Assembly: GCA_001179505.1 (NCBI GenBank)
Contig: CDMY01000231.1
Location: 1-64,000, forward strand
Direction: 5' to 3'
Source: Vitrella brassicaformis CCMP3155
Lineage: Eukaryota > Protista > Chromerida
DNA length: 64,000 nt
Below the pieces are notes generated by a model. It saw only the letters and a list, made by a program, of their open reading frames with translations, did not search any database and was not told where the DNA came from. Position numbers and translations under genes: made by a program. Positions 22,931 through 61,479 of the stretch are shown here, piece by piece (positions within the stretch are counted from its first letter, which is position 1; the number at the start of each line of letters is the position of its first letter).

Positions 22931-24724
22931 TCCACGACAAGATTGCTTGATTGGTCCCTACCTGATGTGGGTGGGGAGCTATCCAAAGAGACGAAAAGAG
23001 CCTCCATGCAATCAAGGCTTTGCTGCGTGCTGTCTGTCTGTCGTGGCGTGTACATATGTGTGGGCGATGAGGGCCGCAGCCGGTCTGGCACTAAGGGCAT
23101 TCTTTCATGCATGCATATCATTCATGTCATGTCAGGTATCAAAGGGGGGAGGGGTAAAGGCACAGCACAGCACAGAGAGAGTGTATGTATGGTCATGTCA
23201 TTATGTATATCATCTGTACTTCTGTATACTCGCACGGCACATGCACATGTACATGTCTGTAAGTAGTGCATCCAGGCATGGTGAGCACGTGAGCACGTGA
23301 GTGAGTGAGTGAGCGAGAAACCCTGCCAGCAGGAGGACTATTCCCTCTTACACGTACGTGCGTACGCTTAATTGCACCATCAGCAGCGACACACAACCAA
23401 CCAACCAATCAATCAACCCAGCGCGACAACACGACACGACACGACACGACACGACACACACACCATGGGCAGCAGAGAGAGAGGGAGCGACGAGCGAAAA
23501 AGTTAGGTGGGCGGTGGGTGTACGTATCCAATGCACCATCCATCCCATCTGCTGTGAGTAACGAAATATGAATGGCCAACAAACCAACAACAAAGTTACG
23601 ACGAATGGACGGATCCATGTCAGTAAGCTAGGGGTCCTATCGACTCCTACGAACCAACCAACAACCATCAACCAGAGAGCGAGCGAGAGAGAGCATCGTA
23701 GTCACCCAGCTGTCTGGCCGCCTGAGTATCTATCGGTCGACATACACAGACAGACAGACAGACAGATGCCGGGCGTGGGAGATGAGTGAGAGAAACAGAT
23801 GGAGGCGGAAAAAGAGTGTGCGGTGAGGCGTGACACAACAAACATGTCTCGCTTGCTCGCTCGCTCGCTCGTCACGGTTCTTGTGCGGTGGCTGTGTGTA
23901 CACATTATACACAGCCACGAATAGCAATGATACAGATGAGTGTGAGTGTGTATGCCGGTCAGCATATATATATATGGGTACACAATGACAACGGCACGAA
24001 CGAGAAAGATGGAGAAATATGTAGGTCGGTGCGGTGGGCTGGTGGGTCGACACAACGAATGCACAACTTGTCTTCCCTCGCTCGCCCGCCCCTTGTGTGT
24101 GAGTGTGTGAGTGTGTGTGTGCGATGGTGTGATATATGCGATGTGGCCCCATGACGCAAAATACACACCCCACACATGTGATATCTATCGACTTGCTCCT
24201 CACTCACTCACTCACCTGCTGACTTCCTCCTCGCCCCGCCCCCCTGCACGAGACATCAAATCAAATGAATAGCATGTATGCATGCATGCATACAACTGCG
24301 GACCCACGCACGCACACTCACACTCATGCAAATGTCACGTAGTAGTATAGTGTAGCACATCCATAGGGGCATGTACATACGTATGTACGTATGTACACAT
24401 GTGCTCACGTACTCATTCATGTGTATAAACCATCCACGTCACTCACTCACTAACGCACACACCACCACCCACCCACCCAAATAGTCAGTCAATAAGTCAG
24501 TCAGTAAGTCAGTAAGTCAGTCAGTCGCCAAGTGTCGGTTACAAAACGATGACACCACAGCACAGAACAGCAGGCAGGTCGACAGGTATATGTCAGACAT
24601 CCATATGGCAATCCATCCATCCATCCATCCACGCTATCACATCACATCCACTTGCGATCGATCCATCGGCCACGCATGCCATGCATGCGATCGATCGATC
24701 ATATCCTTCATCACCCACCATCAC

Positions 24725-27700
24725 TCACTCCTCGTCGCACTCGTCCACCCGCATCAGGATCGACAACTGCCTGCTCAACTCAATGGCCCGCTCGAGTGCT
24801 CGGGGGGACACCTTTGCTCGGCCTTGCTCGCCAGACGCACACGAGATGAAGAGGTCGTGTGCACTGGGCCACTCGGCGCGCCTCAGATCCTCCTGCAGAT
24901 GGGCCGTGGAGATCATCAGGTGGTCGCGGGGCTCGTGTGGGGGGCACCAGTGAGAGGTAAAGCGCTGCAGACAGACAGAAAGAGGGATGTGTGTGGAGGG
25001 AACTTCGTGGTTTGGTTTGTGTGTGTGCTTCGGTGGCGTGCGTACGTGTACGAGTGGCATGAGTGGGTAGAGAGGTGATGCCGCGCCCCTCTTCTTGATG
25101 GTGGCGAGGAAATGGTCCACCGACACCGACTTCAGCGGCACACCCAAGTCGCCGAGCCAATGCTCGCGCTCAGAACTGATCGTCCACAAACAAACAGGTA
25201 GGTACACACAAACAACGAATGCACTCCGCCCTCCCTCCGTGTTGTCTCTCTCTAGTGTGTGCTGTGCTGTGTCCGTACTTGGTGATGAGCTCTGGGTTGG
25301 CGAGATGGTAGACCCAATGGCGACGCTTCTCGGTCAAACACAGCCGGACCTGCACAGACACGACATGGACACAAGAACAACGAATGCATCGCGTCCACTC
25401 ACTCCCTCACTCGTCTAGGCACACTCTCTCCTCTCACCATACCATCATGGCAGCGACGACATCCACGGGGGTCGCCAGAGGCGCTTTCACGACGGGCGGC
25501 ATCTCCCCCTCCTCGAGCATTGCCATCATCAGCGCCCCGCCCACGTGCCTCTCGTCCACGTAGCCCGTCATCAGGCTCGTCATGCCGCTCGGCACTCGGT
25601 AGATGGTGCACGGCAGGCCCCTCGCCCGCGCCTTCTTGAGCACCTGCTCCGTCGACCAGTTGGTCCACGGGAGGCCGAATTGCTCGGGTGGGCAGACCTC
25701 GCGCAGGCGCTTGGTGTCGAGGGTGGTGGCCTCGCGGAGCTCCTTGCCCTGGCCAAGGACGTACTCGGGGAAGAGGGTGAGGGACGACACAAAGTGGAGG
25801 GGCTTGAGCTTGCTGGTGGTGCACAGCCGCACGATCTCCTTCATCGCGAAGGTGTTCTCGCGCAGGCGGTCGTAGCTCTGCATGAACGACTGGCCGTTGG
25901 CGAAGCCCGTGTGGAAGACCAGGTCGATCCGCTCGCACAGCTCGGCAAAGAAGTGCTCGGCCAGGTGGTTGGGCTTGAGGCCGAGATGCCGCCGCGTCAC
26001 GTGGCCGGGCACGATCATCAGCCGGCTCTGGTACTCGTCCTTCCAGATGCCCGCTTCCTGGCACGCCTCACGCACCTGCCGCAGACCCTCCTCGTCGCTG
26101 TTGGTCTGCACCAGGCAATGCACCGTCAGCCGCTCCTTGGCCTGCAGCAGCGCCACGGTGAGGAACCGGCCCACTGCTGACGTCGCGTCCGTCACGAGCA
26201 CGTGTCTGCTCTTGCGGGGTTGTGGGTGGGGGGCAGGGAGGGAGGCGACGTCGAACTTGAAGCTCTTGGCCACCTTGTTGACGTCCGTCTCGGGGTCCCT
26301 CTTCCTAGTGGTGCCGTCGTCCGTCGCGTTCGAGCCGCTGCTCTCGGTGTTGTTGGTGGCGCCGTCCCTGTGCCCCGAGAAGGGGGCGATGGGCTCCATG
26401 ACGCCCTCCTGCTCACGTTTGGCCACCAGCTGCCCAGCCAAAGCGTCCAGCGAGGGGTTGTCGAACATAGACGAGGGCGGCATGTCGATGCCCGTCATCC
26501 GCCGCACGTGCTCGCTGAACTCGGTCATGCCGATCGAGTCGAGGCCCAGATCGAGCAGTCTGCCGGAGGGCGACGGCCGCTCCTCCCCACCCACCACCGA
26601 GTGGGCGACGGACGCCAGGGAGTCGGCCAGGGCGGTCTTGCCCGTGTCGTTGGTGGATGAGGGTCGGAACGGGTCGGTGGGCGATGTGGGCTGCACGGAT
26701 GAGGCACGAGTGTCGGTGGAGGAGCGGAAGCTGGAGGGGGTGAGGGTGGAGGGGGTGAGGGTGGAGAGGGACCGTGTCGAGGCGTCGGTGAGGACCGACG
26801 GGCAGGGCGCGTTGCGGGGCGTGGACTTGGCGGTCTTGACGACGGTGTCTGCTGGTGCTGCTGCCGTGCAGAGGTCTTCGCACCACATGACGCCGCCCTT
26901 GCCGTTGGCCCGACTTCTTTGGAGCATCTGCTTGGCCTTGCTCCGCTGCAACTTGCCCGAGGTGGTCTTGGGCAGGACGCGCGGCTTGAGCAGCCAGATC
27001 TGCTGCACGGGCAGACCCACCTTCATGCTCGCCGCACGGGCCACCTCCTCTGCGATCGTCCGCAGCACCGCGTCCTTGTCGCCATGGCGATCCGTCGTGC
27101 ACGCCAGCATCGACACAAACCGACCAAACCCGCCAAAGTGCCGCCTGCTCGCCCTCTTGCTGCTCCCCTTGGCCCCACCCGCCATGGCCAGCGCCCTGAC
27201 CCCCTCCGGCCGCAGCTCACATGCGATGCCCATGCCCTCTCCCTGCTCGCTCTCCACGGGGAAGGCCGCGCAGCAGCCGGGTCGCACGACGTCACACTTG
27301 GCCTCGATGGCCTCCTCGATGTCCTGAGGGATGTACTTGCGCCCCCTGACGATGATCATGTCCTTGGCGCGGCCGGCGATGAAGAGCTCGCCCTTGTAGA
27401 GGAAGCCGGTGTCGCCGGTCCGCAGGAAGGGCCCTTGCTGCTCGGGTGCGTTGGTGGTGCCCGAGAGGGTGGCCCGGAACGTCTGATGGGTCTGCTCCGC
27501 CATGCCGAAGTAGCCCTTGGCCGTAGAGGGAGACGACAGCCACACCTCACCCACCTGGCCCTCGGGAAGCAGGTGGTGGGTGGACGAATCCACTATCGCA
27601 ACTGATGGATGGATGGATGAAGGAAAAAAGAGAGAGAGCACATGAGGGCAACTCAGTGGGCTTGTCTGTGTGTGTGTGTGGGCATACCAGTAGTGTCGGT

Positions 27701-29807
27701 GGCAGGGAGTCTGCAGCCGATGATGATCTTTCGCTCGGACGTGTCTGTCCAGCTGGGGCGGAATCCATACCACTCCTCCTCAATCCGAACGTTGCCCTGA
27801 TGGACAGACACATGCACATACATACACGGTAAATGAATGCAAATCAGACGCGATGCGCACACGTGTCCGTCCGTCGATGCGATGCGTGCATGCATCCTAC
27901 GTTGGTTTCTATCTCTAGAGCGTTGATCGAGAGCACCAGCGGCTCTGCGTCGAGGGATGGCCGGAAGCCGGTGACACACAGGGTGTTCTCGGCCAACCCA
28001 AATGCAGGCAAGAAGGCGCTGTGGCGCACGCCAACCTCCCGAAACGTCTGCACACACACATATATGCACATAGATAGACATGACTGACACATGAGATAGT
28101 GGCCTGGCCATCCATCGGTGGCTCACTCACATCCATGAAGTTCTTGATGGACGAGTATCTGATGGGCTCTGCTCCGCACAGCCAGGACGCCTTGCTGAGG
28201 TCGAGGGACTTCCTAATGTCCTCGGGCGTCTTGCGGCTGACCAGGTCGTAGGCGAAGTTGGGTGCGGCTGTGACCTCGCACTCCCACTTGGTTAGGCCCT
28301 GCAGCCACGACCAGGGCCGCCGCACGAAATCCAGCGGGGACATCATGATCATCTCGCTGCCGAAGAACAACGTGCCACCAACAAGACCAATCAGACCTGA
28401 TGATAAGAAAGGTAAGAAAGGGGAGAGGGAGAGAGAGGGAGAGAGAGAGAGATGAATTGTCGGTTGTGTGTGCTTCATTCAGTTCGTCCATCGTCTCACT
28501 CACTCACTGCATCCATGCATGCCTACCCAGGTCATGATAGACCGGCAGCCAGCTAAACGTGCGTACGTTGTGCCCCAGCACACTCCGTGACTGACTGTGC
28601 CTGTTGTACCAAAATGTCACGAACTCGCGCAACGGGCGATCAAACAGCGGGACGAAGGCCTCCTCGCTGCCGTTGCCCTCCCCTCCGCTGTCCTTCCTGA
28701 GGTCGTGCTTGGTGCGGTGATCGTCTCGCGGGTCCATCCCGAAGGTGGCCGTGCACAGGTGCACGTTGCTAAAAAAGTCACAACACAAGGACATAGACAG
28801 TGCATTCACAGTGAATGCATCCATCCGTCACGGCACGCATCCATCGTGTGCACAGCCTGTTCTCTTACTGGAGGAGGTTTCCGTGTGTGACCGAGACGCC
28901 CTTGGGGTGGTTGGTGGACCCCGACGTGAACTGCAGGAAGGCCACCTGGCTGTGGGGGATGTCGGAGGGGAGAGGGGGGAGGGACGGGCCGTGGCTGTTC
29001 TTGGAGGCCCTGTCGATGAGCTCCTGCGAGCTGGACCACCGCAGCTTGCGCCATTCCTTGCGCACCTCGTCGGTCAGCTCGTTCTCCTTGGCGGCCGGCG
29101 GCTGCGTGTGCGAGTGGCCGTTGGATGCGAGGGGTGCCTGGAGATGGCTGGCGATGGACGAGGAGGGGCGCTGGCTGTGGAGGCTCAGCTTGCAGTTGAG
29201 GCCGTGAAGAATGCGCTGGTAGAAGTTGTTGGTCAGGCACGCCTGCGCCTTGACCGTCGAAGCGATCCGCGTGAAACGGGGAAGGTCCGTGCTCAACTGA
29301 AAGAAAGAACAATGACACACAGACAGACAGACAGACAGACAGACATGAACACACAAACGTGCGGCCACCACCCACCCGAGTGGTCGTATGTATGTGTCCC
29401 TCCCGTGGTGGTTGCCTAGACTGACTGACCTTGGAAGGGTCAGGAGGGTAGACAGGCACGGCGACCACCCCACTGTACAGGCACGCGAAGAAGGCCACGA
29501 CGAAGTCGATGCCCGGGGGGTAGCACAGCAGCACCGACGCAGGCTTGCCATCCTCACCCCGATCCAGCATCTGCAGCAGCTGCCGCCCCAGCGCCTCGGC
29601 CCGCCGATGCAGCTCCTGATAGCTGAGGGCCGACTCCACCGATCCGTCCACCTTGATGAAGCGGACGGCATTGACGGACGGCTGCACACGGGCCCAGTAG
29701 GAGATGATCCGCCGCATTGCGGGACCCTCCTGGGGCACTTCCGTCGGCGCGCCGTCACCACATGGCCACCAGCACTCGTTGACGTAGAAGTCGTAGAGGT
29801 TGGCCAT
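24725..29807 (-). CDS. Fatty acyl-AMP ligase (FAAL)-ACP-thioester reductase-like tridomain protein; R domain degenerate
   Basis: FAAL motifs LLCYPPGIDFVVAFFACLYSGVVAVPVYPP, AFLQFTSGSTNHPKGV, SWLPVYHDLG|LIG, APNFAY, CGAEPI, FGLAENTL, LRTGDTGFL, GRAKDMIIVRGRK, LPKTTSGKLQR. ACP LLDLGLDSIGM. The R-like region has VLVTDATSAVG and GLPWTNW in place of TGxTGFLG and GYxxSKW. Confidence 0.9.
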
Positions 29808-30329
29808 GTGCAGCAAATGGATCCGGACAATCAGACAACGCAATTGACAACGCACTGGCTGACTGACAGCGGGACACCAAAATCAAATCAGCACATATAT
29901 ATTATAAACCGTAACAGACACTAACCAACCCGGTGTCAGTACGGTAGCGACACGTGGATCCAACACATGGCGGCTGGGGAATTTACGCCTCGTGGCTAAG
30001 CTCGCAAAAGGCAGTGATCGACTTTGCCCGCCGGCTGGTGAGCGAGTCAAAAGGAGCCTTGCGCCACGACAAAGGGAAGACTGCACACGACAGGACAGGA
30101 CGGGCCACCGGCAGCACAGATCTCTGCCGCAATTAACGCGTGGATGGATCGGTGATTTTGAAGATGAACTCACTCGTGGGTGCCGTGATTCTCTGCCTCG
30201 TGGCTACTGGTGAGGTCACCGCACACACACACAACCACACGCACATGTGAATGTCTTGTGCATATCCGTGGGTTGATCTGCCTGTCTGTTTGTGATTTGT
30301 GTCATGGTGATCTCAGGTCTGAGTGCCTC

Positions 30330-32360: not shown

Positions 32361-35300
32361 ATGGCCGGAGATGCGAAGAAGGGTCTTTGGTGTCGGCTGG
32401 GGGAAGTGAGGGAGGTGTTCCATAGTGTGAAGGAGCGGCTGGTGGATGGGATCAGCGAAGGCTTTTATCGGTACACCTTGTTCGTCTACGACTACCCATG
32501 CTGGGTAAGGAGGCGAAGCAAAGGAGGGTCTCAAGAGGCTGCTTCATGGGTCCCTTGCACATGTGCCCTTTTGTCTGTCTGTCTGTCTGTCTGTGTGTCT
32601 GTGTGTGTGTCAGTTCATCTGGGTGCCTGTGTTGGTGGCTTTGTTTATGGGGGTTGGAATTCTCAACCGAACAGAGGAGTACGGGCCGATGAAACTGTAC
32701 GCTCTCTCTGACTCGCAGGCCATGAAGGTCCGTCCACCAGACAGACACACAGATGTGTGAAGCCCTTTCTCTCCCCTTTGCTGCTGTCCTTTTCTCTGCT
32801 CAATAAGTCAGGATCAGGCCAGGCTGACCGAGCTGTTCGGCAACATGCCGAGGGTGACCTACCTGCTTGTGGAGGGCATTGACGGCCAGAACCTGCTGCA
32901 GCCACACATACTGCGGGCCCTCAACCGTTTGGACCGGCAGGTGGCCAACCTGACCGTCACTGTGGACGGGGTGACGTATGGGTATGAGGACCCACGATAT
33001 GAGTCCGTGTGTGTCAAGGACGGCACCAAGCGGTGTGAGCATGAGAGCGTCGTGCAGCTCTACCCACCCAAGGAGTGGAAGACCGACTATGGCGACGGGA
33101 AGTGAGTGAAGTGAAGAGGGAAACAGAGGGAGGGAGGGAGGGTGGCGGGGACAGGGCATTACACGCACACACGCTGTGCTGGTTGTTATTTGTTTGTCTT
33201 TGTTTGTGTGCGTGTAGCTATGAGGTCGACTTCAACAAGAGCCTCGACTACCCGTACCACTACAGCGTGCGGTTGGACAGCAACTGGTCCCGCGAAAACT
33301 CCTCCAACATCCGTTGGCCCGTCCCCCTTCTCGTCGCTAACGTGACACTCGAACCGGAAGGATGCAACCTCGCCACTGTCAAGACAGGAATCGGAGGCGG
33401 AGGATGCAAGGTCAAAGCCGCTGAAGGTGAGCGAGCCATCGCTCGTAGGCATGCGCATTCGCATCACTCACTGTTCCTCTCTCCACCCCGTGGCGTGTGT
33501 GCAGCCCTGCTGTTCCGGTGGCTGCTGCGTCTTAATGGTTCGGATGACTTTTGGGATCCGGTGTTGCTGGCGTGGGAGCAGGCGTGGCTCGATTTGATGT
33601 GGGAGCAGATGCCGGTGTTCGACGAGATCGGCGTGAGGCTGGTGCGCAACGCCCGGCGGTCAATCGACGACGAGCTCGAGGAGAGCACGCGGCTGGGGCT
33701 GCTCGACTTTGCGCGATACGTCATCGGCGGCATCATCATCTTCTCATACTGCGCCATCGTCAACTTCTCCACCACACCGCACCGATCCAAGTATGCTTGT
33801 ATGTGTGCCGCGGGATGGATGCGTCCACGTGTGTCCCCCCCTCTGTCTGAGTGTTGCAGGTCCCTGCCGGCGTTGTTTGGGTGTTTTGCGGTGCTGTGGG
33901 GGGTGATGTTCTCTGCGGGTCTGTACTACAGCCTGGGGTTCGTGCACGTGCCGCCGATCGAGGCGACCCCTTTCCTCTGCATTGGCATCGGCGTCGACGA
34001 CACGTTCGTCATACTCAACAGCTACGCACTGGCCGTCAAGGTGACCGACCCTAGGGAGCGGGTGGCCGTCGCCATCAAAGACTGCGGTACGTTCTTGGAT
34101 AGATTTGGTGTCGGAGGGAAAGCGTGTCGGTGCAATTGTCTCTGTCTCTCGGCGTGTGTCTGTATGTGTGTGTGTGTGTGTGTGGTGGATTCAGGCATAT
34201 CGATAACGATCACCACTCTGACCAATCTGATTGCCTTTGGTGTGGGTGCGTCGAGCGACTACTTCTCCATCCGGCTCTTCTGCATCATCACCTTCTTGGC
34301 GCTGCTCATGGTCAGCCAGCCTGCCCCACAATAAACACACATATGTATACCCATGCACACACAGAGATGTCCCTGTCTTCCTCGATCCCCTTTCAGAGCT
34401 ACTTCTACGCCCTCACTTTCTTTCTCGCCAGTGTGTGTCTGGACGCCAAGCGTGAGGCGGCCGGCAAGGGGCCTTACCTTGAGACATGGTGCAACACCTG
34501 CAGAAAGAGGAGGCGATCATCCACACCAACACCAACACCAGCACTAAAATTAGCACAACCGCCACCGCCACCAGCTGCTGAAGAACACCACGATCCAGAG
34601 CAGCCACAGCCGGACAGTACCACCGAGCCAGAGCAAGAGCAGGAGCACCATTCGGTGAGCATCTCAGCCGCCCACCCCTCCACCCCCCGCCGCACCTCCC
34701 CCCCTCCCGCCCCCCCTGACACCTTTGAGCTCGCGGCTCTGCAGCTCAAGGTGCAAGAGCTCACCATCAGGCAGAGAAAGGCCAGCACAAGCACCACAAG
34801 CACCACAAGCACCACGAGCAGCTCGCGACAACACGGGTGCAGCAGTGGCGGTTTCTTCGGCGTGCATCTGGGTTACGATGATGGGTGGGACGAGGCGCGG
34901 GACGGCCCCATGGCCGACGTGGTGGAGCCTGTGGGCACTGTTGGGCGGAAGGTGCGGTGGGCGTTCAGGCGCCTCTGGGGCAGATGGGTCACCATCCCTG
35001 CTGTCAAGGTAGACACACATACACACACATAGACACACCAAGGCAGAGGGAAAGATCATCTACCGTCCCTCGCTACATGTGCTTATGCAGGTGGTGACTC
35101 TGCTGTTGTTTGCCGGCTACATTGCCGTGTCTGTGTGGGGCGTGACGCGAATGACGACTGGTTTGGATCTCTTCTGGCTGACGCCTGAGGACTCGTACTA
35201 CAGGGTGTTCTGGAGTCGGTACTTCACCAGCTTCACCTCCTACGGCGAGGACGTCTTTGTAGTCTTCCCAAACCGGCAGGAGTGGTGGAAGAAAGACGTC

Positions 35301-48803: not shown

Positions 48804-51800
48804 CTAGAACAAACATTCACGCCCGTCACCTGGGCGCTGCCCCATCAAATTGCGGGGCTCCACAGCGCCCAGTGAGTCGAAGTGAGTGTCCTGGGGCGCC
48901 GGGCGGTTTCTCGAGAGACAAAACAAGCCATGGAGACAGGCGGAAGACGGAAGACATCCGGTTCGCCGCCTGACGCAGACGTCGGAGTCATAGTACCTCT
49001 CGAGGGCCGTCCTGACCTGCTCCTCGGTCAGATGCACTTCCTCCAGCGCATAGCTGCGCTTCAGCTTGTCCTTGTGTTCCTTGTTCTCGTTGATGAATGC
49101 CCACATGCTGTCTCTGGCCCGCTTGTTCATCGGTATCTTGAAGTGCCTGTAGATCTTCTTAACCATCTCCATGGGACCGTTGATCAGGTCGTCGTAGTGC
49201 ACGTCCAAAAATTGCTTCTGGAGGTGAGAATTCTTCGCGCGAAAATCCATGGAATGGTCGACCATGTTGGCTATCACCTCAAGCTCCTTCTGGCCCACCG
49301 CGTCGAGGTCCACCTCCTCAATCAGCTCCTTCCGCACCGCGCCTACGAGGCTGCACCATGAGGCGACAACATCCTTCGGACTTCTGTACACACACACATC
49401 ACACACACACACGCGACAGTGAGCGTGTCTGTGTGCAATCGGGGTGGTTGGCGCTGACCTGTGTACGTGGACGACGAGCGCGTTAGGGTATGTCTCGAAC
49501 AGTGCATCGAGTGCGAATAGCTGGAAGGGCATGTTGAGGAGCCACCTGTTTCCGGCCCGCTGCCACTGCAGGTGCTGTAGAAACCGCTTGTGAAAGGCGT
49601 ATCCGCGGTTCATCTCTTTGCAGTCGTCCTTGAAGAGCCACTCCTTGTATGCGGGTGTGTCGAACTCCACGCACATACTGTAGGATCTAAAGCAGTGCTC
49701 GAAGATCATGTAGTCCTCGTCTGGCCAGTCGGCCCTCTGCGCGTGGATGCGCATCCAGTCGTCGCTCATGCTCCGAACGAAATCCAGCGCCTCTTGCGCA
49801 GGGGCCAGCCGGGGATCCTACAGGCGTACACACACACACACACACGCGCGCGCGCGCGTCACCAGTGCTCGTGTGCTCGTGCGGCATGCGGCCCGGTGCT
49901 GACACGTACCTGGTCCCAGTCCCATGGGGCGTCGTTGGGTACGTTGTGCGGTCTGTATGATCCGTCCTCGCCGTATGGACAGTACATCTCACTGTACATG
50001 GGGGCCCTCATAGCAGGGTCTTGTGCGATCAGCCGCTGCAGTAAGGTGGCGCCCATCCGATCGAGACCCACGATAATCAGCGGCTGTCTGATCTGCTGCC
50101 GCTCTATCTCGGGGTTGAGGCGCGCCACCTCCTTCATGAACAGGAGGTTCTTGAACATCTGCCGGGACGTGCGGAACATCGCCAATTCCCCGAGGAAGGA
50201 CAGCTTCACCTCCTGATTGGCGCTTTTGGCCAGCAGCCGTGCTGGCTCCAGGTAGAAGTCCTCACCTTCCGCCTCGGTCGCGAAGTCCCTGAGACCGTCG
50301 GTGTGCTTCCGCGCCCACTCGAGTGCGTGGTCAGCATCGATGATGACGGAGTTGCCCTTGGGAGCGAAGAAGCGAAACTCGATTTGGTACTGGAAGGAGG
50401 CCCGGAAGGTGTCCTTGACGGGTGGCCATGCCATGTGTGGGAGCTCGTCGAAGATGTTATGGGTGCGGATGGGGAACGGCTCGGTCCGCTCGTCGCAGTC
50501 GAACCAGTAGGACCGCCAGTACTGCATGAGGAGCACGAACTTGAAGACGGGCGACTCGGGACCGCGTTTCTTGACGGCGTCGAGGAAGGTGTCGATCTTG
50601 ACGCCATAGTACTTGATGCCCAGCTCGTCTGCCCACGCCTCAAGCTGACCCCTGCACACGGACATAGGATACGTCAAATCGATGCATTCGATTGAGCCCT
50701 GTTGCCTTACTGTTTGACGACGGTGGTGTCGATGAGGTGGTACAGCCAGTGCTTCCGCCGCTCAAGGAACGAAGCCTCCACCTATACGACGAACGAATGA
50801 CCGGACGAATGAAGCCCCCACACAAGCTTTGCGACCTACCAGCATCTCAGCAATGGTGTCCACCGGTGTGAAAGGCGCCGTAGACGCGCCGACGGGGAAC
50901 ATGCCCTCCTCGATGGAGCTGACAGTCAGCGCCGTGGCGAAGTCGTCCTTGTTGGTGTACCCTGTCCGCCAGCCGACGAACGTGCTGGGGAGTCGGTACA
51001 CGCACACGGGCAGGCCCATGTCGCGAGCCTTGCGCAGCACTTGCTCGGCGGCCCACTTGCTCCAGGGGTAGCCCATGCGGAGAGGGGGGAAGAACTTCTG
51101 CATCTCCTTGGGGTCGGGGGAGGAGTCCTCGGTGATGAGCCGGTCGTCGAACTCCTGGCTGAAGCAGGCAACGAAGGCCGGGAAGATGCCCAGGGTGGAG
51201 ACGTGGTGGAGCGACTTGAGGCGGTAGGTGGTGCACAACCGCAAGACGCCCTTGAGGGCGAGTGTGTTGGTTGCACGGAGACGAGCGTAGTTGCTCAGGA
51301 GGTTGACATTGCCGCCAGTGTGGTGGACCTGAATGAAGAAACCACACACAGAGAGTACATGTCAAGCCTTCGATCACTGCTTCCCCGTGCTGCGCATGTG
51401 CAAGTCACCATGTCGATGGTTCGGCAGAGTTCCACGAATTTGTCTTCGCCGACGCCGAGGTCCTCCTTGGTGAAGTCTCCGGGTAGCGCCTCGATGCGGC
51501 TGGCGTACTCCTCCTTCCACACCTTGGCCTCATTGCACGCGTCGCGGATGCGCTGCATGGCGTGCTTCTCGTCGTTGGCCCGCACCAGGCACGTGACCTT
51601 CAGGTTCTCACTCCCCGGCCGGTCCAGCAGGCATACCACTTGCAGGCGGCCGACAAACCCCGTTACGCCGGTGAGCAGCACGTTCTTAACTTGCTTGGGG
51701 TGCCGCATGGGCAACAGAGTGTTGACGTCGAACTGCAGCCACTCTGTGAGGTCCTTGATGTCGTCCATCGGGTCGACCGTCTTCTCTCGGGGCTTGCCAC

Positions 51801-54800
51801 CGCCCACGGCTCCTCGGATGGCCTCGTCGTAGTCGGTCGCCGCGCCGTCCTGTGCCGCTGCCGGGGCGCCGTTGAGTGGCGATAGCTTGTCGGAGCTGGA
51901 TACGTTGACGAGGGACGAGCGCATCTTGTCCCATGAGTCGTGGAGGCGCCTGAAGTCCTCCTCGTCCCGCACCTGGCAGACGTCGAGTGCGAGTCGGAGG
52001 TCGGTCTCCTGCGCCATGGCCTCGACGGATGGGTACTTAGCCTCGAAGACGTCGAGGTACTGGAGGTAGCGCTTGGAGCCGCTGAAGGCGCTCTTGAGCC
52101 ACCCCTCGACCGTCATGTCGTGGTTGTCGACCTCCGTGGATGAGGGCGCCTTGCCGCTGCCCTGCTCGTCCTTGGCCGCGTCGCCCGCCGCCGCCAGCCG
52201 CTCCCTGTCCACACCTGACACCTCCTCCACCTTGTCGACATCCCCCTTCTTGCCGATCTTGGTCGGCCGCCCGTGGGCAGTGTCGAGGATGAAGTCGGCA
52301 ATCACTTCGATGGTCGGGTTCTCGAACACCAGTGTCTGAGGCAGCTTGACGCCCGTCAAGTCCGCAACCGAGTTGCGGAACTCCACAGCCCCCAGTGAGT
52401 CGAGACCAAGGTCCATGAGTGGTGCGTCGATCGGGGGCTTCTCAGCAGACCCCGACACCTGCTGCGCCAGCGAGCTCAGCAGACCCGACAGGTCCAGCTT
52501 GCTGATGGCCTTGAGGTCGATCTTGCCACCGCCACTCTCGGCCGACGCTGCCATGGGGATCTCTGAGAAGAAAGCGGGCATGTCGCCATACCGCCGCAGG
52601 AAGGTGGCCCACTTGAGGCCCTGGCAGCCGAACACTGACGGCCCGCGCATACCAGGCGCCAGAGACTGCTGCCGCATGACGTCCCCCATGACACGAAGAA
52701 CAAGATCGTTGGTGATGCCGCGCATTCCCGCCTTGTCGAGGTGCTGCTTGAGTTCCACCGCCATGCCCTGCTGGATCCACGGGCCCCACTGAATGCTCTG
52801 CGCCGCGAGCTTCTTGGATCGCCGGTACTCGGTGAGGGCGTCCAGGCATGAGTTGGCCGCCGAGTAGTTGGCCTGACCAAAGTTGCCGACTAGTGAGGCG
52901 ACGGAAGAGAACATCATGAAGTGGTCGAGAGGGGTCTCCTCGTCGAGCGACAGCTCGTGGAGGTACCAGGCACCCATCACCTGCACACACACACGAGGCA
53001 GAAGCGATGGATGAGGAACACTTCTCGTGAGGGTCTCCTGAGTGTTTGACTGGCTCGCTAGCTCGCTGGCTTAAAAGTGAAGTGACTGTCTGACTGAGTG
53101 AGAGAGCGACGGAATTGGTGAGTGCCTGACTGCCTGCCTGCCTGCCTGCCTTAATGGCGCACGCAAAAAAGGATGGGGTGTGTGAGTAACTGGCGATGCG
53201 AGTGAGTAAGAGGAAGAGAGAGGGCAGCAGTCACGGCCTGGCTGGCTGCCTCACAACCCAAGTGATTGACTGACTGACTGACTGAATCAGTCAATGAATG
53301 AGTCAGTGGGAGTAGAAGCAAGCTTGGGGGTCTCACTCACCTTTGGCAAGTAGACCTTGTCCACCTTGNNNNNNNNNNNNNNNNNNNNNNNNNNNNNNNN
53401 NNNNNNNNNNNNNNNNNNNNNNNNNNNNNNNNNNNNNNNNNNNNNNNNNNNNNNNNNNNNNNNNNNNNNNNNNNNNNNNNNNNNNNNNNNNNNNNNNNNN
53501 NNNNNNNNNNNNNNNNNNNNNNNNNNNNNNNNNNNNNNNNNNNNNNNNNNNNNNNNNNNNNNNNNNNNNNNNNNNNNNNNNNNNNNNNNNNNNNNNNNNN
53601 NNNNNNNNNNNNNNNNNNNNNNNNNNNNNNNNNNNNNNNNNNNNNNNNNNNNNNNNNNNNNNNNNNNNCCCGCACCTAGCAGACGTCGAGTGCGAGTCGG
53701 AGGTCGCTCTCCCGCGCCATGGCCTCGACGGATGGGTACTTGGCCTCGAAGACGTCGAGGTACTGAAGGTAGCGCCTGGAGCCGCTGAAGGCGCTCTTGA
53801 GCCACTCCTCGACCGTCATGTCGTGGTAGTCGACCTCCGTGGATGAGGGCGCCTTGCCGCTGCCCTGCTCGTCCTTGGCCGCGTCGCCCGCCGCCGCCAG
53901 TCGCTCCCTGTCCACACCTGACACCTCTTCCACCTTGTCGACATCCCCCTTCTTGCCGATCTTGGTCGGCCGCCCGTGGGCAGTGTCGAGGATGAAGTCG
54001 GCAATCACTTCGATTGTCGGGTTCTCGAACACCAGTGTCTGCGGCACCCTGACGCCCGTCACCTCCGCAATCGAGTTGCGGAACTCCACGGCCCCCAGTG
54101 AGTCGAGACCAAGGTCCATGAGTGGTGCGTCGATCGGGGGCTTCTCAGCAGACCCCGACACCTGCTGCGCCAGCGAGCTCAGCAGACCCGACAGGTCCAG
54201 CTTGCTGATGGCCTTGAGGTCGACCTTGCCACCGCCACTCTCGGCCGACGCTGCCATGGGGATCTCTGAGAAGAAGGCGGGCATGTCGCCATACCGCCGC
54301 AGGAAGATGGCCCACTTGAGGCCCTGGCAGCCGACCACTGACGGCCCGCGCATACCAGGCGCCAGAGACTGCTGCCGCATGACGTCCCCCATGACACGAA
54401 GACCGAGTTCGTTGGTGATGCCGCGGATGCCGACCTTGTCGAGATGCTGCTTGAGCTCGGCTGCCATTCCCTGCTCGATCCACGGTCCCCACTGGATGCT
54501 CTGACACGGCAGCCCCTGCGACTTGCGGTAGAGGGCGAGGGCGTCCAGACACGAGTTGGCCGCAGAGTAGTTGGTCTGGCCGAAGTTGCCGAGCAGGGAG
54601 GCGACGGACGAGAACATCATGAAGTGGTCGAGAGGGATCCTCTTGCCGAGGGACAGCTCATGGATGTTCCATGCACCCATCACCTGCACACACGATAGAG
54701 GAAAGGGATGAGTCAACAACCTCGTTGGGGAACGATTCATGTTCGGGTTCCCTCTCACCTTTGGCAAGTAGACCTTCTCCACCTTGTCTTTGGTCTGGTT

Positions 54801-57800
54801 GTTGAGGGCAGCGTCGTCAAGCCTCTCAGCTGCGTGGAAGACTCCACGGACTGGGTTCTTGGGCAGCTTCTTCTTGAGGTCAGCGAACAGATTCTCGCAC
54901 TCGTCCTTCTTGGACACATTCACGGCCATGCAGTATATGGTCGCCTTGGAGCGGCCATGAGGCTCGGGCGCCGTCAGCTTCGTCCACAGATCGGAAGCAG
55001 CAACGGCATCAGTCGGCTTTCCGCGCCTGGATAGCAGAGCGACATTTTTTGCTCCCTCCTCCACCAGCCAGTCTGCGACAAGCAGTCCGAGTCCGCCGAG
55101 TCCTCCGGTGATGACATAGCATCCGTCAGTCTGGCGGCCGGCCGGTGTCGCCTCGTCGCGCTGTGTGTCGTCTGTGTGGGGCGGTGCGATGGCTGAGGGT
55201 ATTTGTATGATGACCTTGCCGATGTGCTGCGCTCTCTGCATAAACCTGAAGGCCGCGATGCCGCCGGTAACGTTGTCTGCGGTGCTCATGTCGAATGTGT
55301 GGAGGGGGATGGGTTTGATCTTGCCGCTGTCGACCAGGCCTCGGACACGATCGAGCATGGCGCCGAACCAGTTGGGATCTTGCTCCATCATGTGATCGAC
55401 GGTGATGGCCTCGTACATGGCCAAGTCGGGCCGCCTGGCAAGGACCTCCTCTTTGCTCCAGATGCCGCGCTTGCCGAGCTCCATGAAGCGGCCCTTGAGC
55501 GCCATGGCGTCGAGCGAGAAGGGAATGAAGTCCTCGATGAGGCAGTTGAGGACGACGTCGATCTTGCTGTTGGCCTTGTGCATGTCGGCCTGGAACTGGC
55601 TGGCGTCGCGCGAGCTCGTGACCAAGTGCACGCCCTGCTGTCGTAGGAAGTCCTGTTTGTGCTGGCTGCCCGCCGAGCCATAGACATTGGCCCCGACGGC
55701 CTTGCAGTACTGGATGGCCGCAAGCCCGACGCCGCCCGATGCCGCGTGGACGAGAACGTTGTCTCCCTTGGTGACCTTGGCGAGCTCTCGGAATGCGACC
55801 TCGACCGTCACAAAGACGACCGGCAGGGCGGCCGCCTCTTCGAAGGTCATCGATGCGGGCTTGATGGCCATCAGGTTGGCGTCAGTCGTCACGTACGTCC
55901 GCAGGCAGCCCGGCGCCACGCCGTAGACGTCATCCCCAACACACAAGTGACTCACGCCCTCCCCCACAGCCACTACCGTACCCGAGCAGTCGCCGCCCGG
56001 CGGGCCGGGGTCGCCAGGATACAGACCCATCACGTTCAACACGTCGCGGAAATTCAAACCGATCGCACGAACACGGACCTCGATGCAGCCCACAGGGGGC
56101 GGGATGCGGGCGGCCTGGGCCAGCGGTCTTAGCTCGAGGTCGGTGATGGCTCCTCGCTGTGGCATGTAGAGCTCCACGGCTCCCCTCAGGTCAACCTTGG
56201 CCTTCTGCATCCTCGAGTAGAAGCATGCTGGCTGGCTTGGGGTCTTTTCGGTCGGGCGTGTATTGCGAAGGGCCACCTCTGCCTCATAGCCCACGGTGTC
56301 CCCTTGCGCGTTGAGCAGGATGGCCATCTGTTCTATGAAGCCGTCGACGGTGTCGGGCGAGGTGGGGTCGATGTCGACGCAGCCCATCTTGATGAGAGTG
56401 CCGATGTTGTTCTCCAGCTCCAGTCGGGCCGTCTTGGCGAAGCCCCACAGGCCGGCGTGGCGCGGTATCTCTGGCAGCGTTTCGTCGGGGAGCGCGAGCT
56501 GCGTGCCGCGAGTGACGAGCCAGATGGCAGGGAGTTCGACGTTAGTGCCCAGCTTGAGGATGACCTGGGCCATCCTGAGGGCCTCGCTGACCACCACAAC
56601 CGGGTCGGACCGCTTCTCGAGGCTGCCCATGTGGAGGACGCAGTCCCACTTGTTCTTGTCGGCAAGGATCTTCTCCATGTCCATGGCGTCAGGTGTCTCG
56701 CCGTACGCGATGAGCCGCGACTCTCTGCTCTTCCCGCACTCCACCAGTCTGCTGTACAGCACCTTCTTCCAGGCAGCCGGCACGCCAAACAAAAGCCACC
56801 TTGGTTCAGCGGCAGCAGCCTCCTCCTCAGCAGCAAGCTCCTTGCTTGGCTCGGCCTGTTTCCACGTGACCTCCCAGAGGATGTCCCGGGGTATGTCTGC
56901 AGGCGGCGTGGTGTCCATCTGCCGCAGACTAACGTTCTTGAGGTAGGCGGCGATGCGGCCCCTGCTGTCCTGAATGACCACATCGATGGTCGCAGCACGG
57001 TCCTCGCGCTTGAGCAGGCGGACGTGACTCCACAGCTCGCTCGACGGGGCGATGCGAGCCAGTGAGACCCTCTCCGCCCCCACGGGCACCAGAGCTGCCT
57101 TGGTCTTCCTCTTGCCGGACTGGTCGGCCGCGAGTATGGCGGCGGCTGACTGCAGGGCGCCGTCGAGGATGGCGGGGTGCAGGCGGAAGCCGCCCTCGAA
57201 TGGCTTGATGGGCGGGTCCAACTTGAGCAGGGCCAGCGCCTGGTCATCCGACACGAACAGCTCTGTCACCGTCTGGAACCGCGGGCCGTACGCCAAACCG
57301 ATCTCCTTGAGCTGCGTGTAGAACTCTGACAGCGGGGCGGTCTTGTTGCACCGGTGCTTGAGGGTGGTGAGGTCCTCCACCAGGTCACTCTCGCTGTCGT
57401 CCACGTGGGCGACCTTGACCAGACGGCCGGTGGCGTGCGACACGAAGTCCTCCTCGCCGGGGGCTTGTGTAGTGATCTCGACGGCCATGGGGGGCATGGC
57501 GGCGCTGCTGTCAGTCGTTGGCTGCTTCTCGACGGTGATGCGGATGGTGGGCATCTTGGGGTCGGGCTGCTTGTCATCGGGCTTGGGCAGCATGAGCGGC
57601 CGCTCGAACGACACATCCTCCAGATGCACAAGCTCTGCAGCCGATATCTTGGCCCCCCTCTCCACCTGCGCTGCTGCCAGACCGGCGCTCGCCAGGATAT
57701 CAATGAACCCTGCGCCAGGCATCAGAGGCACGCCTGCAAACGCATCAAGATATACACAAAGCAAATGCTTCAACCAGCAAGCCGCATGTGTCTGGTCTCA

Positions 57801-60484: not shown

Positions 60485-60849
60485 CTGTAGCCAGCACAGC
60501 AGAGCACCAGCACATGGGTGAGTGGTTTGGCCAGATCATGGATTCATCATGGTTACCGAAGGGGGGGAGCAACATATCCCGCAAAAGGATCCTCTGAAGG
60601 GCATGATGGCGTGATCCCGTCAGTCAGCGAAGCCAGTCAACGAGGTGACGTTGATCGAATCTTAGGGATGAGATGTCGCGAAACAATTGCGATATCGAGG
60701 CGTTTCGAATTCGCAGATGTCGTCTTCTGTCTCTGTTCCACCTCATCCGTCCATCTTTTCCTCTCTCTCGCCCAGCCTGTGCTCATATCCCTCTGTTTCT
60801 CGGTCCCTCCCTTCCGCAGGCCTCCATCCACTCGCGCTCGTCCCTCGCG

Positions 60850-61479
60850 ATGCGGTTCCTTCTCTGCCTTGTCGGTGCCCTCCTGCTGGTCGGCAGTGTG
60901 CACGCAGAGGAACTCATCGACTACGGCAATTGGTGTGGCGTTCGCAACACACAGGACGATGAGAACTACCGCTGTATTGACGGCGTGGACTGCGCTTGTC
61001 GTCAGCACGACCTCTGCATAGAACGCCACCTCAAGGATGGGTACACATTAGAGCTACACAAATGCAGCTGGTACGTACGTAAGGCGAGAGGAAGCAAGCC
61101 GCGCACTTCTCATGTTTTCGCGTCGCGTGTTTGTTTCAGTGACAAGGACTTCCTCAAAGCCCTCCCTGGCGCATCGTGTTCGAAACCGAAGTGCCCCGTA
61201 TACAAAGAGGCTGCCATTGAGCTGTTCCGCCGCAAGCCGTGTATAGAATACAAGCGCCCCTGTATCATGGGACACTGTACCGAGATTCCCGTTCCGGGTG
61301 TGGGCGGGACAGCAGCTACGGGGCCTTCGACAGAATCGGTAGTCGACGATGCTAAGGACGCTGTCGATGCCGCTAGGGACGCCGTCAAAGACGTCGCCGA
61401 TGTCGCCAACGACGCCGCCAAGCGTGGTCGAGATGCCATCAGGAACGTCGCCCCTCGGGTGCCAAAAAAACCCTGGTAG
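60850..61479 (+). CDS. Secreted phospholipase A2-like protein (two exons, intron 61071-61139) with an Asp/Ala/Lys-rich repetitive tail
   Basis: Signal peptide MRFLLCLVGALLLVGSVHA; Ca-loop YGNWCG; catalytic DGVDCACRQHDLC; spliced CSC|DKDFLKAL; tail DDAKDAVDAARDAVKDVADVANDAAKRGRDA. Confidence 0.85.
   Translation: MRFLLCLVGALLLVGSVHAEELIDYGNWCGVRNTQDDENYRCIDGVDCACRQHDLCIERHLKDGYTLELHKCSWYVRKARGSKPRTSHVFASRVCFSDKDFLKALPGASCSKPKCPVYKEAAIELFRRKPCIEYKRPCIMGHCTEIPVPGVGGTAATGPSTESVVDDAKDAVDAARDAVKDVADVANDAAKRGRDAIRNVAPRVPKKPW

What the first reader, a model, noticed from the sequence alone, without database searches (positions are those of the whole stretch)
24725..29807. FAAL-ACP-reductase that looks like a carboxylic acid reductase but has a catalytically dead R domain
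Seen: FAAL and ACP motifs are intact (DSIG serine). The R domain reads TDATSAVG (~26170-26196) instead of TGxTGFLG, and GLPWTNW (~25657-25677) instead of GYxxSKW, so it has lost the NADPH glycines and the catalytic Tyr and Lys. The reading frame stays open through the whole R fold to a normal stop, which suggests it is retained rather than decaying. Inference: a stand-alone starter module that loads a fatty acid on its ACP and hands it over in trans, with the pseudo-R as a docking or dimerisation surface, possibly pairing with the active R of the neighbouring PKS.
Basis: partly seen in the sequence, partly recalled or inferred. Interest (0 to 1): 0.75.

Follow-up and report, generated by a model that had tools for sequence, protein, structure and literature searches.

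The report
Fatty-acid loader with dead reductase
The alga Vitrella, a free-living relative of malaria parasites, expresses several copies of a three-part enzyme gene whose last part, a reductase, has lost every residue needed to bind its cofactor or do chemistry, yet selection still preserves it, so it must now serve another, still unknown purpose.

Summary
Window 29807..24725 (minus strand) is a transcribed 10-exon gene of Vitrella brassicaformis. Its product is the public protein CEL95562.1 (1,389 aa), with the layout FAAL-ACP-R*.

- **Intact parts:** FAAL and ACP motifs are intact.
- **Dead R domain:** it still predicts as a complete thioester-reductase fold (pLDDT 87; MxaA TM 0.8). It has lost the Gly-loop (TDATSAVG), two NADPH-phosphate arginines, the adenine Asp, and the catalytic Tyr and Lys (GLPWTNW). 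These are 8 of the 10 changed conserved columns; 31 other conserved columns are kept.
- **Rarity:** among 154 nearest R domains, only one unrelated protein is comparably degenerate.
- **Not decay:** at least 3 loci share the substitutions. R* has dN/dS 0.15 (p=2e-13), as low as or lower than the FAAL. Spliced RNA contigs include all R* exons.
- **Ancestry:** a collinear FAAL-ACP-R homologue with a canonical R exists elsewhere, so the Vitrella family is a derived pseudo-reductase.

That synthase lacks a KS core, Vitrella PKSs carry their own FAAL-ACP loaders, and one paralogue has no PKS nearby.

This is a new variant of a known kind (non-redox R* domains). Its function is unknown.

The parts
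24725..29807 (-). Whole coding region of the FAAL-ACP-R* gene (10 exons, 4,170 nt CDS, 1,389 aa). Product = CEL95562.1 / UniProt A0A0G4EHS2 of Vitrella brassicaformis CCMP3155.
   Evidence: Nine spliced joints in runs X1, X2 and X7. GT..AG checked. Exon phases give an open frame. All exon peptides match P0157 exactly.
29430..29807 (-). Exon 1 (ATG at 29807; FAAL N-terminus, residues 1-126)
28869..29296 (-). Exon 2 (FAAL; contains the A3 motif FTSGSTNHPKG)
28527..28768 (-). Exon 3 (FAAL; ends in SWLPVYHDL)
28131..28396 (-). Exon 4 (FAAL; APNFAYDL motif)
   Evidence: The best PDB matches to this exon are FAALs.
27901..28047 (-). Exon 5 (FAAL; GLAENTLCVTG and the start of the FAAL-specific insertion segment)
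27688..27796 (-). Exon 6 (FAAL insertion segment)
25443..27601 (-). Exon 7, the large exon. It holds the FAAL C-terminal subdomain (to ~26952), linker, ACP (26621-26397), linker, and the R* Rossmann subdomain (26225-25443).
26526..26543 (-). ACP phosphopantetheine-attachment motif LDSIGM (Ser codon at 26537-26535)
   Evidence: PF00550 scores 37.7 bits against a cut-off of 20.8.
26169..26192 (-). Degenerate NADPH Gly-loop: TDATSAVG in place of TGxTGxxG (G->D, G->S, F->A)
26076..26108 (-). Two Arg->Gln changes at conserved Arg positions. In canonical R domains these Arg residues bind the NADPH 2'-phosphate (from general knowledge). They are LVQ (Gln codon 26108-26106) and GLRQ (Gln codon 26078-26076).
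   Evidence: Arg is conserved in 151/154 relatives at the first position and in 90% of relatives at the second.
26001..26003 (-). His in place of the conserved GD aspartate (VPGHV)
25656..25676 (-). Degenerate catalytic motif GLPWTNW in place of GYPW[ST]K[WY]. Tyr->Leu is at 25673-25671 and Lys->Asn at 25661-25659.
25279..25349 (-). Exon 8 (R* C-terminal subdomain)
25046..25175 (-). Exon 9 (R* C-terminal subdomain)
24725..24964 (-). Exon 10 coding part (R* C-terminus, ...RVDECDEE, stop at 24727-24725)

Best explanation
This is an expressed, selectively maintained gene for a 1,389-aa FAAL-ACP-R* protein. It belongs to a small family found only in Vitrella.

**Origin.** The gene arose by joining a PKS-type fatty acyl-AMP ligase to the terminal ACP-R tail of a myzozoan type I FAS/PKS. 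That is the layout of a carboxylic-acid / fatty-acyl reductase, and it still exists with an intact R elsewhere.

**What the front end does (inferred from intact motifs).** The FAAL adenylates a fatty acid and loads it as a thioester on the protein's own ACP.

**What the R domain cannot do (inferred from sequence).** It keeps its whole two-subdomain fold. It has lost the Gly-loop, both phosphate-binding arginines, the adenine aspartate, and the catalytic Tyr and Lys. It can therefore neither bind NADPH nor reduce the thioester.

**What is shown.** The loss is old and fixed, and purifying selection on the domain continued afterwards.

**Most likely role (inferred, not shown).** R* is a non-redox partner of its co-inherited ACP. 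It holds or presents the acyl-ACP, or serves as a docking surface, until an unidentified acceptor acting in trans takes the chain.
For: **Gene and transcript**
- Nine GT..AG joints, an open 4,170-nt CDS, and identity to CEL95562.1.

**Domains**
- PF00501, PF00550 and PF07993 are all above their cut-offs.
- The best solved and NCBIfam relatives of the A domain are FAALs, and the alignment runs through the FAAL insertion.

**Dead site**
- Shown by alignments to MxaA and CAR.
- Of 41 conserved columns, 31 are kept. The 8 non-conservative changes are G21D, G24S, F25A, R48Q, R58Q, D83H, Y193L and K197N.
- 153 of 154 nearest R domains are not degenerate in this way.
- The score falls below the TIGR01746 cut-off: 138 against 213.

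**Fold intact**
- AF2 pLDDT 87.4, pTM 0.88.
- Foldseek gives MxaA R at TM 0.77-0.82 over the full length.

**Retention**
- All Vitrella copies share the substitutions.
- R* dN/dS is 0.15 against the C328 copy (48 synonymous, 26 non-synonymous, p=1.9e-13). The FAAL gives 0.39-0.46.
- The R* Rossmann half is 97% invariant among four family proteins.
- All 5 variants in R* seen in paralogue transcript contigs are synonymous.

**Origin**
- The nearest R domains are Cryptosporidium, Gregarina, Rhytidocystis and Chromera FAS/PKS tails. The R* stem is long (1.68) and the tips are short.
- The ACP is most similar to ACPs directly upstream of R domains.
- The collinear homologue P0048 has a canonical R.
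Against: - There is no biochemical evidence. Loss of NADPH binding is inferred from sequence only.
- The proposed role of R* (ACP partner or docking surface) has no direct support.
- No acceptor for the acyl chain has been identified.
- Gene conversion between loci is evident: dS varies from 0.01 to 0.25 along the gene. This blurs the paralogue history, although it cannot by itself produce a low dN/dS.
- Against the C424 copy, R* dN/dS is only 0.51 (p=0.014).
- MMETSP transcripts may be chimeric assemblies of paralogues, so the per-domain identities are indicative only.
Confidence: 0.55

Rival explanations
1. R* has been re-tooled as a non-redox catalyst that releases or transforms the ACP-bound acyl chain by hydrolysis, transfer to a nucleophile or cyclisation. 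This is what fungal PKS-NRPS R* domains do when they act as Dieckmann cyclases.
For: - In fungal CpaS R*, the triad Tyr is replaced by Leu, the same change as here, and the domain releases product without NAD(P)H (PMC3202784).
- Purifying selection on R* is as strong as or stronger than on the FAAL.
- New polar residues (Asp, Ser, His, Gln, Asn) are fixed in the former cofactor pocket in every copy.
- The triad Ser/Thr position and 31 other conserved columns are retained.
Against: - Dieckmann chemistry needs a beta-ketoacyl-aminoacyl thioester made by KS and C domains. This protein has only FAAL and ACP.
- CpaS keeps a GxxG/SxxG motif; here the loop is destroyed.
- R* is not related to the fungal R* group. 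Its nearest relatives are canonical myzozoan R domains.
- No candidate catalytic residues could be tested.
Confidence: 0.2
2. One reading: a stand-alone starter module that hands its acyl chain in trans to the neighbouring PKS, with R* docking on or heterodimerising with that PKS's active R domain.
For: - Both genes are on the same strand and about 19 kb apart.
- The neighbour ends in a canonical R (TGVTGFVG, GYPWSKW) that is about 40% identical to R*.
- The neighbour has no FAAL of its own in the window.
- A second paralogue (C328/C830) also lies about 3.6 kb from a PKS.
Against: - The neighbour has only a KS C-terminal remnant. No KS core lies anywhere in the 64-kb window or on the contig, so there is no KS to prime.
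- A Patched-like gene lies between the two genes.
- The C424 paralogue has no PKS within about 16 kb, and the PKS beside the C830 copy has its own FAAL-ACP.
- The ACP is the tail type, not the loader type.
- As far as I know, thioester-reductase domains are not known to heterodimerise.
Confidence: 0.08
3. R* is still a reductase. It binds a nicotinamide or other cofactor in an unconventional way and uses substitute catalytic residues.
For: - The fold is intact and the domain is under selection.
- The triad Ser and the HxG motif are retained.
Against: - Six independent cofactor or catalytic positions, each conserved in 90-99% of 154 relatives, are all replaced. One is an Asp at the first loop glycine.
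- All 13 other A-(ACP)-R relatives checked are fully canonical.
Confidence: 0.05
4. The R* region is a functionless relic carried along with a useful FAAL-ACP, or the whole family is on its way to becoming pseudogenes.
For: - The catalytic machinery is gone.
- The family is confined to one species.
- One locus (C424) carries a partial internal duplication of R*.
Against: - dN/dS is 0.15 with p=2e-13.
- There are no stops or frameshifts in any copy, across three introns that are correctly spliced.
- R* is the best-conserved part of the protein.
Confidence: 0.07

Closest known systems
Collinear FAAL-ACP-R proteins with an intact reductase (P0048 from JGI sample 3300019144; bacterial 'thioester reductase-like' A-(ACP)-R proteins)
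   Same: The order of the three domains is the same. P0048 aligns end to end (E=4e-166, 30% identity over 1,378 columns), including lineage-typical FAAL segments.
   Different: All 13 such relatives checked keep TGxTGxxG, both Arg, Asp (Asn in three), Tyr and Lys. The Vitrella family has lost all of them. P0048 also has about 550 extra C-terminal residues.
Carboxylic acid reductases (CAR; A-PCP-R, e.g. PDB 5msv/5mso)
   Same: Adenylation-carrier-reductase architecture, and the R fold matches (Foldseek TM about 0.72).
   Different: - It is not a family member: NF041592 scores 65.6 bits against a cut-off of 1,300.
- The A domain is FAAL-type.
- The R domain lacks the NADPH motif and the Tyr/Lys, so the defining reaction is not expected.
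Fungal PKS-NRPS R* domains (Dieckmann cyclases of CpaS, TenS, EqxS)
   Same: A thioester-reductase fold kept for a non-redox job. CpaS has the same Tyr->Leu replacement (PMC3202784; PMC4979870).
   Different: - The fungal R* keeps a GxxG/SxxG motif, follows C-A-T and acts on beta-ketoacyl-aminoacyl thioesters.
- Here Lys, the Gly-loop, two Arg and the Asp are also lost, the domain follows FAAL-ACP, and it arose independently inside the myzozoan R clade.
Loading (AL/FAAL-ACP) and terminating (ACP-R, often R-sulfotransferase) units of myzozoan type I FAS/PKS (Cryptosporidium, Gregarina, Chromera, Vitrella)
   Same: - The nearest sequence relatives of both ends: FAAL 49-55% identical to Vitrella PKS loaders, R* 35-41% identical to these tails.
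- The ACP is the tail type.
   Different: There are no KS/AT/KR/DH/ER modules between loader and tail, no sulfotransferase, and the R is catalytically dead.

Membership tests
Fatty acyl-AMP ligase (FAAL) | ANL-superfamily adenylation core motifs (TSGSTxxPKG, GDxG, GRxKD, PKTxSGK) | tested here: met
   FTSGSTNHPKG, TGDTGF, GRAKDMIIVRG and PKTTSGKLQR are read in the exon translations. PF00501 scores 159.7 bits against a cut-off of 29.9.
Fatty acyl-AMP ligase (FAAL) | Closer to known FAALs than to acyl-CoA ligases | tested here: met
   PDB: FadD32, FadD23, FadD28, 3kxw and 7r7e score E 1e-26 to 1e-56, against about 1e-8 for CoA ligases. The top NCBIfam hits are FAAL models, though all fall below their full-length cut-offs.
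Fatty acyl-AMP ligase (FAAL) | FAAL-specific insertion between the N- and C-terminal subdomains | tested here: met
   The alignment to 3kxw and 7r7f runs through the insertion segment. The query segment is slightly longer.
Fatty acyl-AMP ligase (FAAL) | Forms acyl-AMP and transfers to ACP rather than CoA | not testable with these tools
   Needs an enzyme assay.
Acyl carrier protein domain | PP-binding fold with the conserved Ser in a (D/G)xDS(I/L) motif | tested here: met
   LGLDSIGM at 26543-26526. PF00550 scores 37.7 bits against a cut-off of 20.8. The motif is conserved in all paralogues.
Terminal thioester reductase (PF07993 / TIGR01746, extended SDR) | Two-subdomain R fold | tested here: met
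   PF07993 scores 112-114 bits against a cut-off of 20.1 over the whole profile. AF2 pLDDT is 87.4. The top structural match is MxaA R at TM 0.77-0.82.
Terminal thioester reductase (PF07993 / TIGR01746, extended SDR) | NADPH-binding motif TGxxGxxG plus the conserved Arg and Asp cofactor contacts | tested here: not met
   The motif reads TDATSAVG. Also R->Q, R->Q and D->H. TIGR01746 scores 138.2 bits, below its cut-off of 213.35.
Terminal thioester reductase (PF07993 / TIGR01746, extended SDR) | Catalytic Thr/Ser-Tyr-Lys triad | tested here: not met
   Ser is retained (VSS). Tyr->Leu and Lys->Asn (GLPWTNW against GYPW[ST]K[WY]).
Carboxylic acid reductase (NF041592) | Family-level sequence score and an NADPH-dependent R domain | tested here: not met
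   65.6 bits against a cut-off of 1,300. The R motifs are lost.
Fungal R* Dieckmann cyclase domains | Triad Tyr replaced (Leu in CpaS), with non-redox release | tested here: inconclusive
   Tyr->Leu is present (PMC3202784). Non-redox release was not tested.
Fungal R* Dieckmann cyclase domains | Sits after PKS-NRPS C-A-T and acts on a beta-ketoacyl-aminoacyl thioester; retains a GxxG/SxxG motif | tested here: not met
   Only FAAL and ACP lie upstream. The Gly-loop is destroyed. The nearest relatives are canonical myzozoan R domains.
Fungal R* Dieckmann cyclase domains | Catalytic Asp/His of the C-terminal part (CpaS D3803, H3843) | not tested

The most novel reading that the evidence does not exclude
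The former dinucleotide pocket of R* has been rebuilt into a new ligand-binding or catalytic site. It would use the polar residues fixed in every copy: Asp and Ser in the old Gly-loop, His at the adenine Asp, two Gln, and Asn at the old Lys. On this reading FAAL-ACP-R* is a self-contained enzyme that makes a new product from a fatty acyl-ACP by acyl transfer or hydrolysis on an SDR scaffold. This would be an origin of non-redox R chemistry independent of the fungal Dieckmann cyclases.
Probability: 0.08. Interest if true: 0.8.

Novelty: new variant of a known kind. Interest (0 to 1): 0.45.

Why it matters
Pseudo-enzyme domains kept inside assembly-line enzymes are usually noticed only when a product is known, as with the fungal R* Dieckmann cyclases.

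This case is unusually clean and independently evolved.
- Every cofactor and catalytic residue of a thioester reductase has been removed, while the rest of the fold is held under purifying selection.
- It occurs in several expressed gene copies.
- It sits next to an apparently functional fatty-acid activation and carrier unit.
- An intact-R counterpart exists for comparison.

The family gives a tractable system for asking what a reductase fold does once it cannot reduce: carrier-protein docking, acyl-chain holding, partner recruitment or new chemistry. It also warns that 'CAR-like' or 'thioester reductase' annotations in alveolate genomes cannot be taken as evidence of aldehyde or alcohol formation. 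Finally, it adds a piece to the poorly understood lipid and polyketide machinery of chromerids, the free-living relatives of apicomplexan parasites.

Tried and rejected
1. **Complex prediction.** Complex prediction on R* (P0157:975-1389) with its own ACP (P0157:845-930) was not folded.
2. **First word search.** The search with the R* region of the 779-aa exon ORF could not see proteins longer than 1,363 aa. It therefore missed the full-length family. The exhaustive search and a second word search with P0157 covered this.
3. **KS and second FAAL.** I looked for a KS or a second FAAL near the gene. I used an own-genome PF00109 scan, an FAAL scan, and tblastn of 31 large PKS proteins on the window. 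None was found on this contig.
4. **Literature.** Searches on Vitrella and chromerid PKS found no mention of this architecture.
5. **Earlier findings.** The search of earlier findings by words returned nothing.
6. **Pfam call size.** One Pfam call exceeded the residue limit and was resent with fewer proteins.
7. **Spliced model.** I did not send a self-joined spliced protein to any search tool. Exons were translated and compared one by one. For full-length work I used the public protein P0157 returned by the cluster look-up. It equals the exon-by-exon model, apart from the four split-codon residues, which one search did not compare directly.

Full report
**What is there**

The region holds a multi-exon gene on the minus strand. 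The window is eukaryotic: ORFs are broken and FAAL motifs are split between frames. The organism is Vitrella brassicaformis CCMP3155, as shown by named near-identical proteins.

Contigs of three public runs (X1, X2, X7) laid on window 24600-29950 show nine joints. All are CT..AC on the + strand, which is GT..AG on the minus strand. A fourth, DNA-like run (X3) shows none. After fixing the cut positions to GT..AG, the ten exons give an open 4,170-nt reading frame. It runs from the ATG at 29807 to the stop at 24727-24725 and encodes 1,389 aa. Each exon translation is found exactly, and in order, in the public protein CEL95562.1 / A0A0G4EHS2 (P0157, 1,389 aa). That protein is annotated only as 'carrier domain-containing protein'.

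Three of the nine introns lie inside the R region and are correctly removed. The transcript therefore contains the whole R* coding sequence. Contigs covering the Gly-loop codons (X1 records 2 and 3) show no differing letters.

**Check of the observation**

- TDATSAVG at 26192-26169
- GLPWTNW at 25676-25656
- LDSIGM at 26543-26526

Pfam finds AMP-binding, PP-binding and a full-length NAD_binding_4 match. In HMMER alignments to solved thioester reductases, TDATSAVG lies on TGATGFLG and GLPWTNW on GYAQSKW of MxaA. Streptomyces coelicolor PKS R (8v1x), Mycobacterium tuberculosis NRPS R (4dqv) and CAR (5msc) align the same way.

The A domain is FAAL-type:
- The best solved relatives are FadD32, FadD23, FadD28 and PKS-loading FAALs, at E 1e-26 to 1e-56. 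CoA ligases score about 1e-8.
- The alignment runs through the FAAL-specific insertion.
- The best NCBIfam models are FAAL models.

**How dead is R\*, and is it beyond chance?**

An exhaustive HMMER search of 1.84 billion representatives found two Vitrella representatives at 95-99% identity. Identity then falls straight to 41%.

Conservation of the lost positions among the 154 nearest non-family R domains:

| Position | Conserved in |
|---|---|
| First loop Gly | 149/150 |
| Second loop Gly | 149/150 |
| LVR Arg | 151/154 |
| GD Asp | 138/154 |
| Catalytic Tyr | 138/147 |
| Catalytic Lys | 148/152 |

Only the Vitrella proteins have lost all six. One unrelated protein (P0073) is comparably degenerate.

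I aligned R* with 40 relatives. Forty-one columns are at least 85% conserved.
- R* keeps 31 of them.
- Two of the ten changes are conservative: L->V and T->S.
- The other eight are G21D, G24S, F25A, R48Q, R58Q, D83H, Y193L and K197N.

By established knowledge of extended-SDR thioester reductases, these eight are the dinucleotide-binding and catalytic set. The damage is therefore targeted at one function and spares the scaffold.

The scaffold does look intact. AlphaFold2 predicts the R* of a 99%-identical paralogue with mean pLDDT 87.4 and pTM 0.88. Foldseek matches it over its full length to the MxaA R domain (TM 0.77-0.82), followed by other PKS, NRPS and CAR reductases. Consistent with the lost motifs, the domain scores below the curated cut-off of TIGR01746 (138 against 213). 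The protein is far below the CAR equivalog cut-off (65.6 against 1,300).

**Retained, not decaying**

The Vitrella assembly has at least three loci:
- C231, this window.
- C424, full length; its gene model P0163 is 1,660 aa and carries a partial internal duplication of R*.
- C328, cut by the contig end. Its 5' part appears to continue at the start of C830.

Three MMETSP transcripts of the family also exist. Every copy carries TDATSAVG, LVQ, VPGHV and GLPWTNW. Every other Vitrella R domain checked keeps TG[AV]TG[FI]VG and GYPW[ST]K[WY].

Nei-Gojobori dN/dS between genomic copies:

| Comparison | Region | dN/dS | Note |
|---|---|---|---|
| vs C328 | R* | 0.15 | 48 synonymous, 26 non-synonymous; binomial p=1.9e-13 against neutrality |
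| vs C424 | R* | 0.51 | p=0.014 |
| vs C424 / C830 | FAAL | 0.39-0.46 | |
| vs C328 / C424 | ACP-upstream linker | 0.61 | |

Among four full-length family proteins, the R* Rossmann half (97% invariant) and the ACP (96%) are better conserved than the FAAL (87-90%). The transcript contigs also carry variants that derive from paralogues. All five inside the R* core are synonymous third-position changes. Five of the six upstream of R* change the residue.

dS varies along the gene between the same loci, from 0.01 to 0.25. This points to gene conversion. Gene conversion complicates dating but does not create a low dN/dS.

**Origin**

The nearest R domains are the terminal R domains of type I FAS/PKS of Cryptosporidium, Gregarina, Rhytidocystis, Cardiosporidium, Chromera and Vitrella itself. 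Many of these are followed by a sulfotransferase. In a maximum-likelihood tree, the R* pair sits inside this clade on a long stem (1.68 changes per column, against a median tip of 0.65) with very short tips. That pattern fits a burst of change followed by constraint.

The ACP is most similar to ACPs that lie immediately upstream of R domains: C900, C561, C201 and the neighbouring synthase. Loader ACPs score far lower. The FAAL is 49-55% identical to FAALs of Vitrella PKS loading units, which are followed by a KS 1-1.5 kb downstream on at least ten contigs. The gene therefore looks like a loader FAAL fused to a terminal ACP-R tail with no extension modules.

That layout also exists with a working-type R. 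P0048 comes from a transcript-like 6.2-kb contig of JGI sample 3300019144. It aligns end to end with our protein (E=4e-166, 30% identity over 1,378 columns) and has TGCTGFLG, Arg, Asp and GYPWTKY. Twelve further A-(ACP)-R proteins are also fully canonical.

About 19 kb upstream on the same strand lies a megasynthase: AT-DH-ER-KR-ACP-...-KR-ACP-R-sulfotransferase, with a canonical R. Before its AT it retains only the last ~60 residues of a KS. Just upstream of it is a divergent ORF with a weak phospholipase-A2 match. No KS core was found anywhere in the window or on the contig. A Patched/sterol-sensing gene lies between the two genes.

The C424 paralogue has no PKS-like sequence within about 16 kb on either side. 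The C328/C830 paralogue is 3.6 kb from a divergent PKS that has its own FAAL-ACP.

Together with the tail-type ACP, this gives no support for priming the neighbouring PKS or pairing with its R. Hand-over in trans to some other partner remains possible.

**Most likely mechanism**

Shown:
- The gene, its transcript and its domain order.
- Loss of the cofactor and catalytic set.
- An intact predicted fold.
- Purifying selection.
- Restriction of the family to Vitrella.
- The existence of intact-R counterparts.

Inferred:
- The FAAL adenylates a fatty acid and loads the cis ACP (intact motifs).
- R* cannot bind NADPH or reduce.
- R* survives because it does something else with its co-inherited ACP. 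I favour a non-catalytic role, either holding or presenting the acyl-ACP or acting as a docking surface for an unknown acceptor (confidence about 0.55).

The main rival is a new non-redox catalytic role, as in fungal R* Dieckmann cyclases (about 0.2). In CpaS the triad Tyr is likewise Leu (PMC3202784). However, that chemistry needs a beta-ketoacyl-aminoacyl substrate and those domains keep a GxxG/SxxG motif. A reviewer of NRPS structures states that the triad and TGxxGxxG are present in all NRPS reductase domains examined (PMC10510592). This underlines how unusual the complete loss is.

**Novelty and verdict**

I found no mention of this architecture in papers on Vitrella or chromerid PKSs. 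Earlier notes of this scan cover only the loaders and the R-sulfotransferase tails.

Non-redox R-like domains are a known kind. A FAAL-ACP-R* with the whole cofactor site erased, independently evolved in an alveolate alga and kept in several expressed copies, is a new variant of that kind.

The finding is real and well supported as an observation. Its mechanism is open. Interest is moderate (0.45).

Noticed in passing
window 48804-60584 (-): The neighbouring megasynthase (AT-DH-ER-KR-ACP-...-KR-ACP-R-sulfotransferase) keeps only the last ~60 residues of a KS (...VSSFGFGGANAHILVE) before its AT. No KS core was found in the window or on contig C231. The gene is either 5'-truncated or the assembly is broken there.
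   Followed up: partly
window 60673-61479 (+): An ORF with an apparent signal peptide and a YGNWCG...CACRQHDLC motif. It is a weak Phospholipase A2 match (PF00068, 23.9 bits, below the 32.1 cut-off). It lies divergently, just upstream of the truncated synthase.
   Followed up: partly
G000:C424:51409-53176 (-); protein P0163 (1,660 aa): The C424 paralogue carries a partial tandem duplication inside R*: residues ~3-228 are followed directly by ~28-261. Both copies have the dead motifs. The first copy is 99.6% identical to this window's R*, while the rest of the gene is only 85-92% identical in DNA. This could be gene conversion or an assembly artefact. MMETSP transcripts show a single R*.
   Followed up: partly
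G000:C328:116822-118948 (-) and G000:C830:2-2816 (-): The C328 copy runs off the contig end, and its 5' part appears at the start of C830. The two contigs are probably adjacent. About 3.6 kb away on C830 a divergent PKS starts with its own FAAL-ACP.
   Followed up: partly
protein P0073 (778 aa, eukprot transcript GHVS01065576): An independent, heavily degenerate R domain fused to a sulfotransferase, in another protist transcriptome. Its Gly-loop, Arg, Tyr and Lys positions are altered. This suggests pseudo-R domains arise repeatedly in this lineage.
   Followed up: no
L026 (JGI 3300019144 contig, 6,186 bp); protein P0048: A transcript-like contig encoding a 1,959-aa FAAL-ACP-R protein with a canonical R. 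It has about 550 further C-terminal residues with no Pfam match. It is the closest intact counterpart of the Vitrella family, and its source organism is unknown.
   Followed up: partly
window 33075-34331 (+): A Patched / sterol-sensing-domain coding segment lies between the FAAL-ACP-R* gene and the megasynthase.
   Followed up: no
Vitrella genome, many contigs: The genome holds at least 40 KS domains. FAAL-ACP is the usual cis loader and ACP-R-sulfotransferase a frequent tail. The same tail is seen in Gregarina, Chromera and other myzozoan proteins retrieved here.
   Followed up: partly
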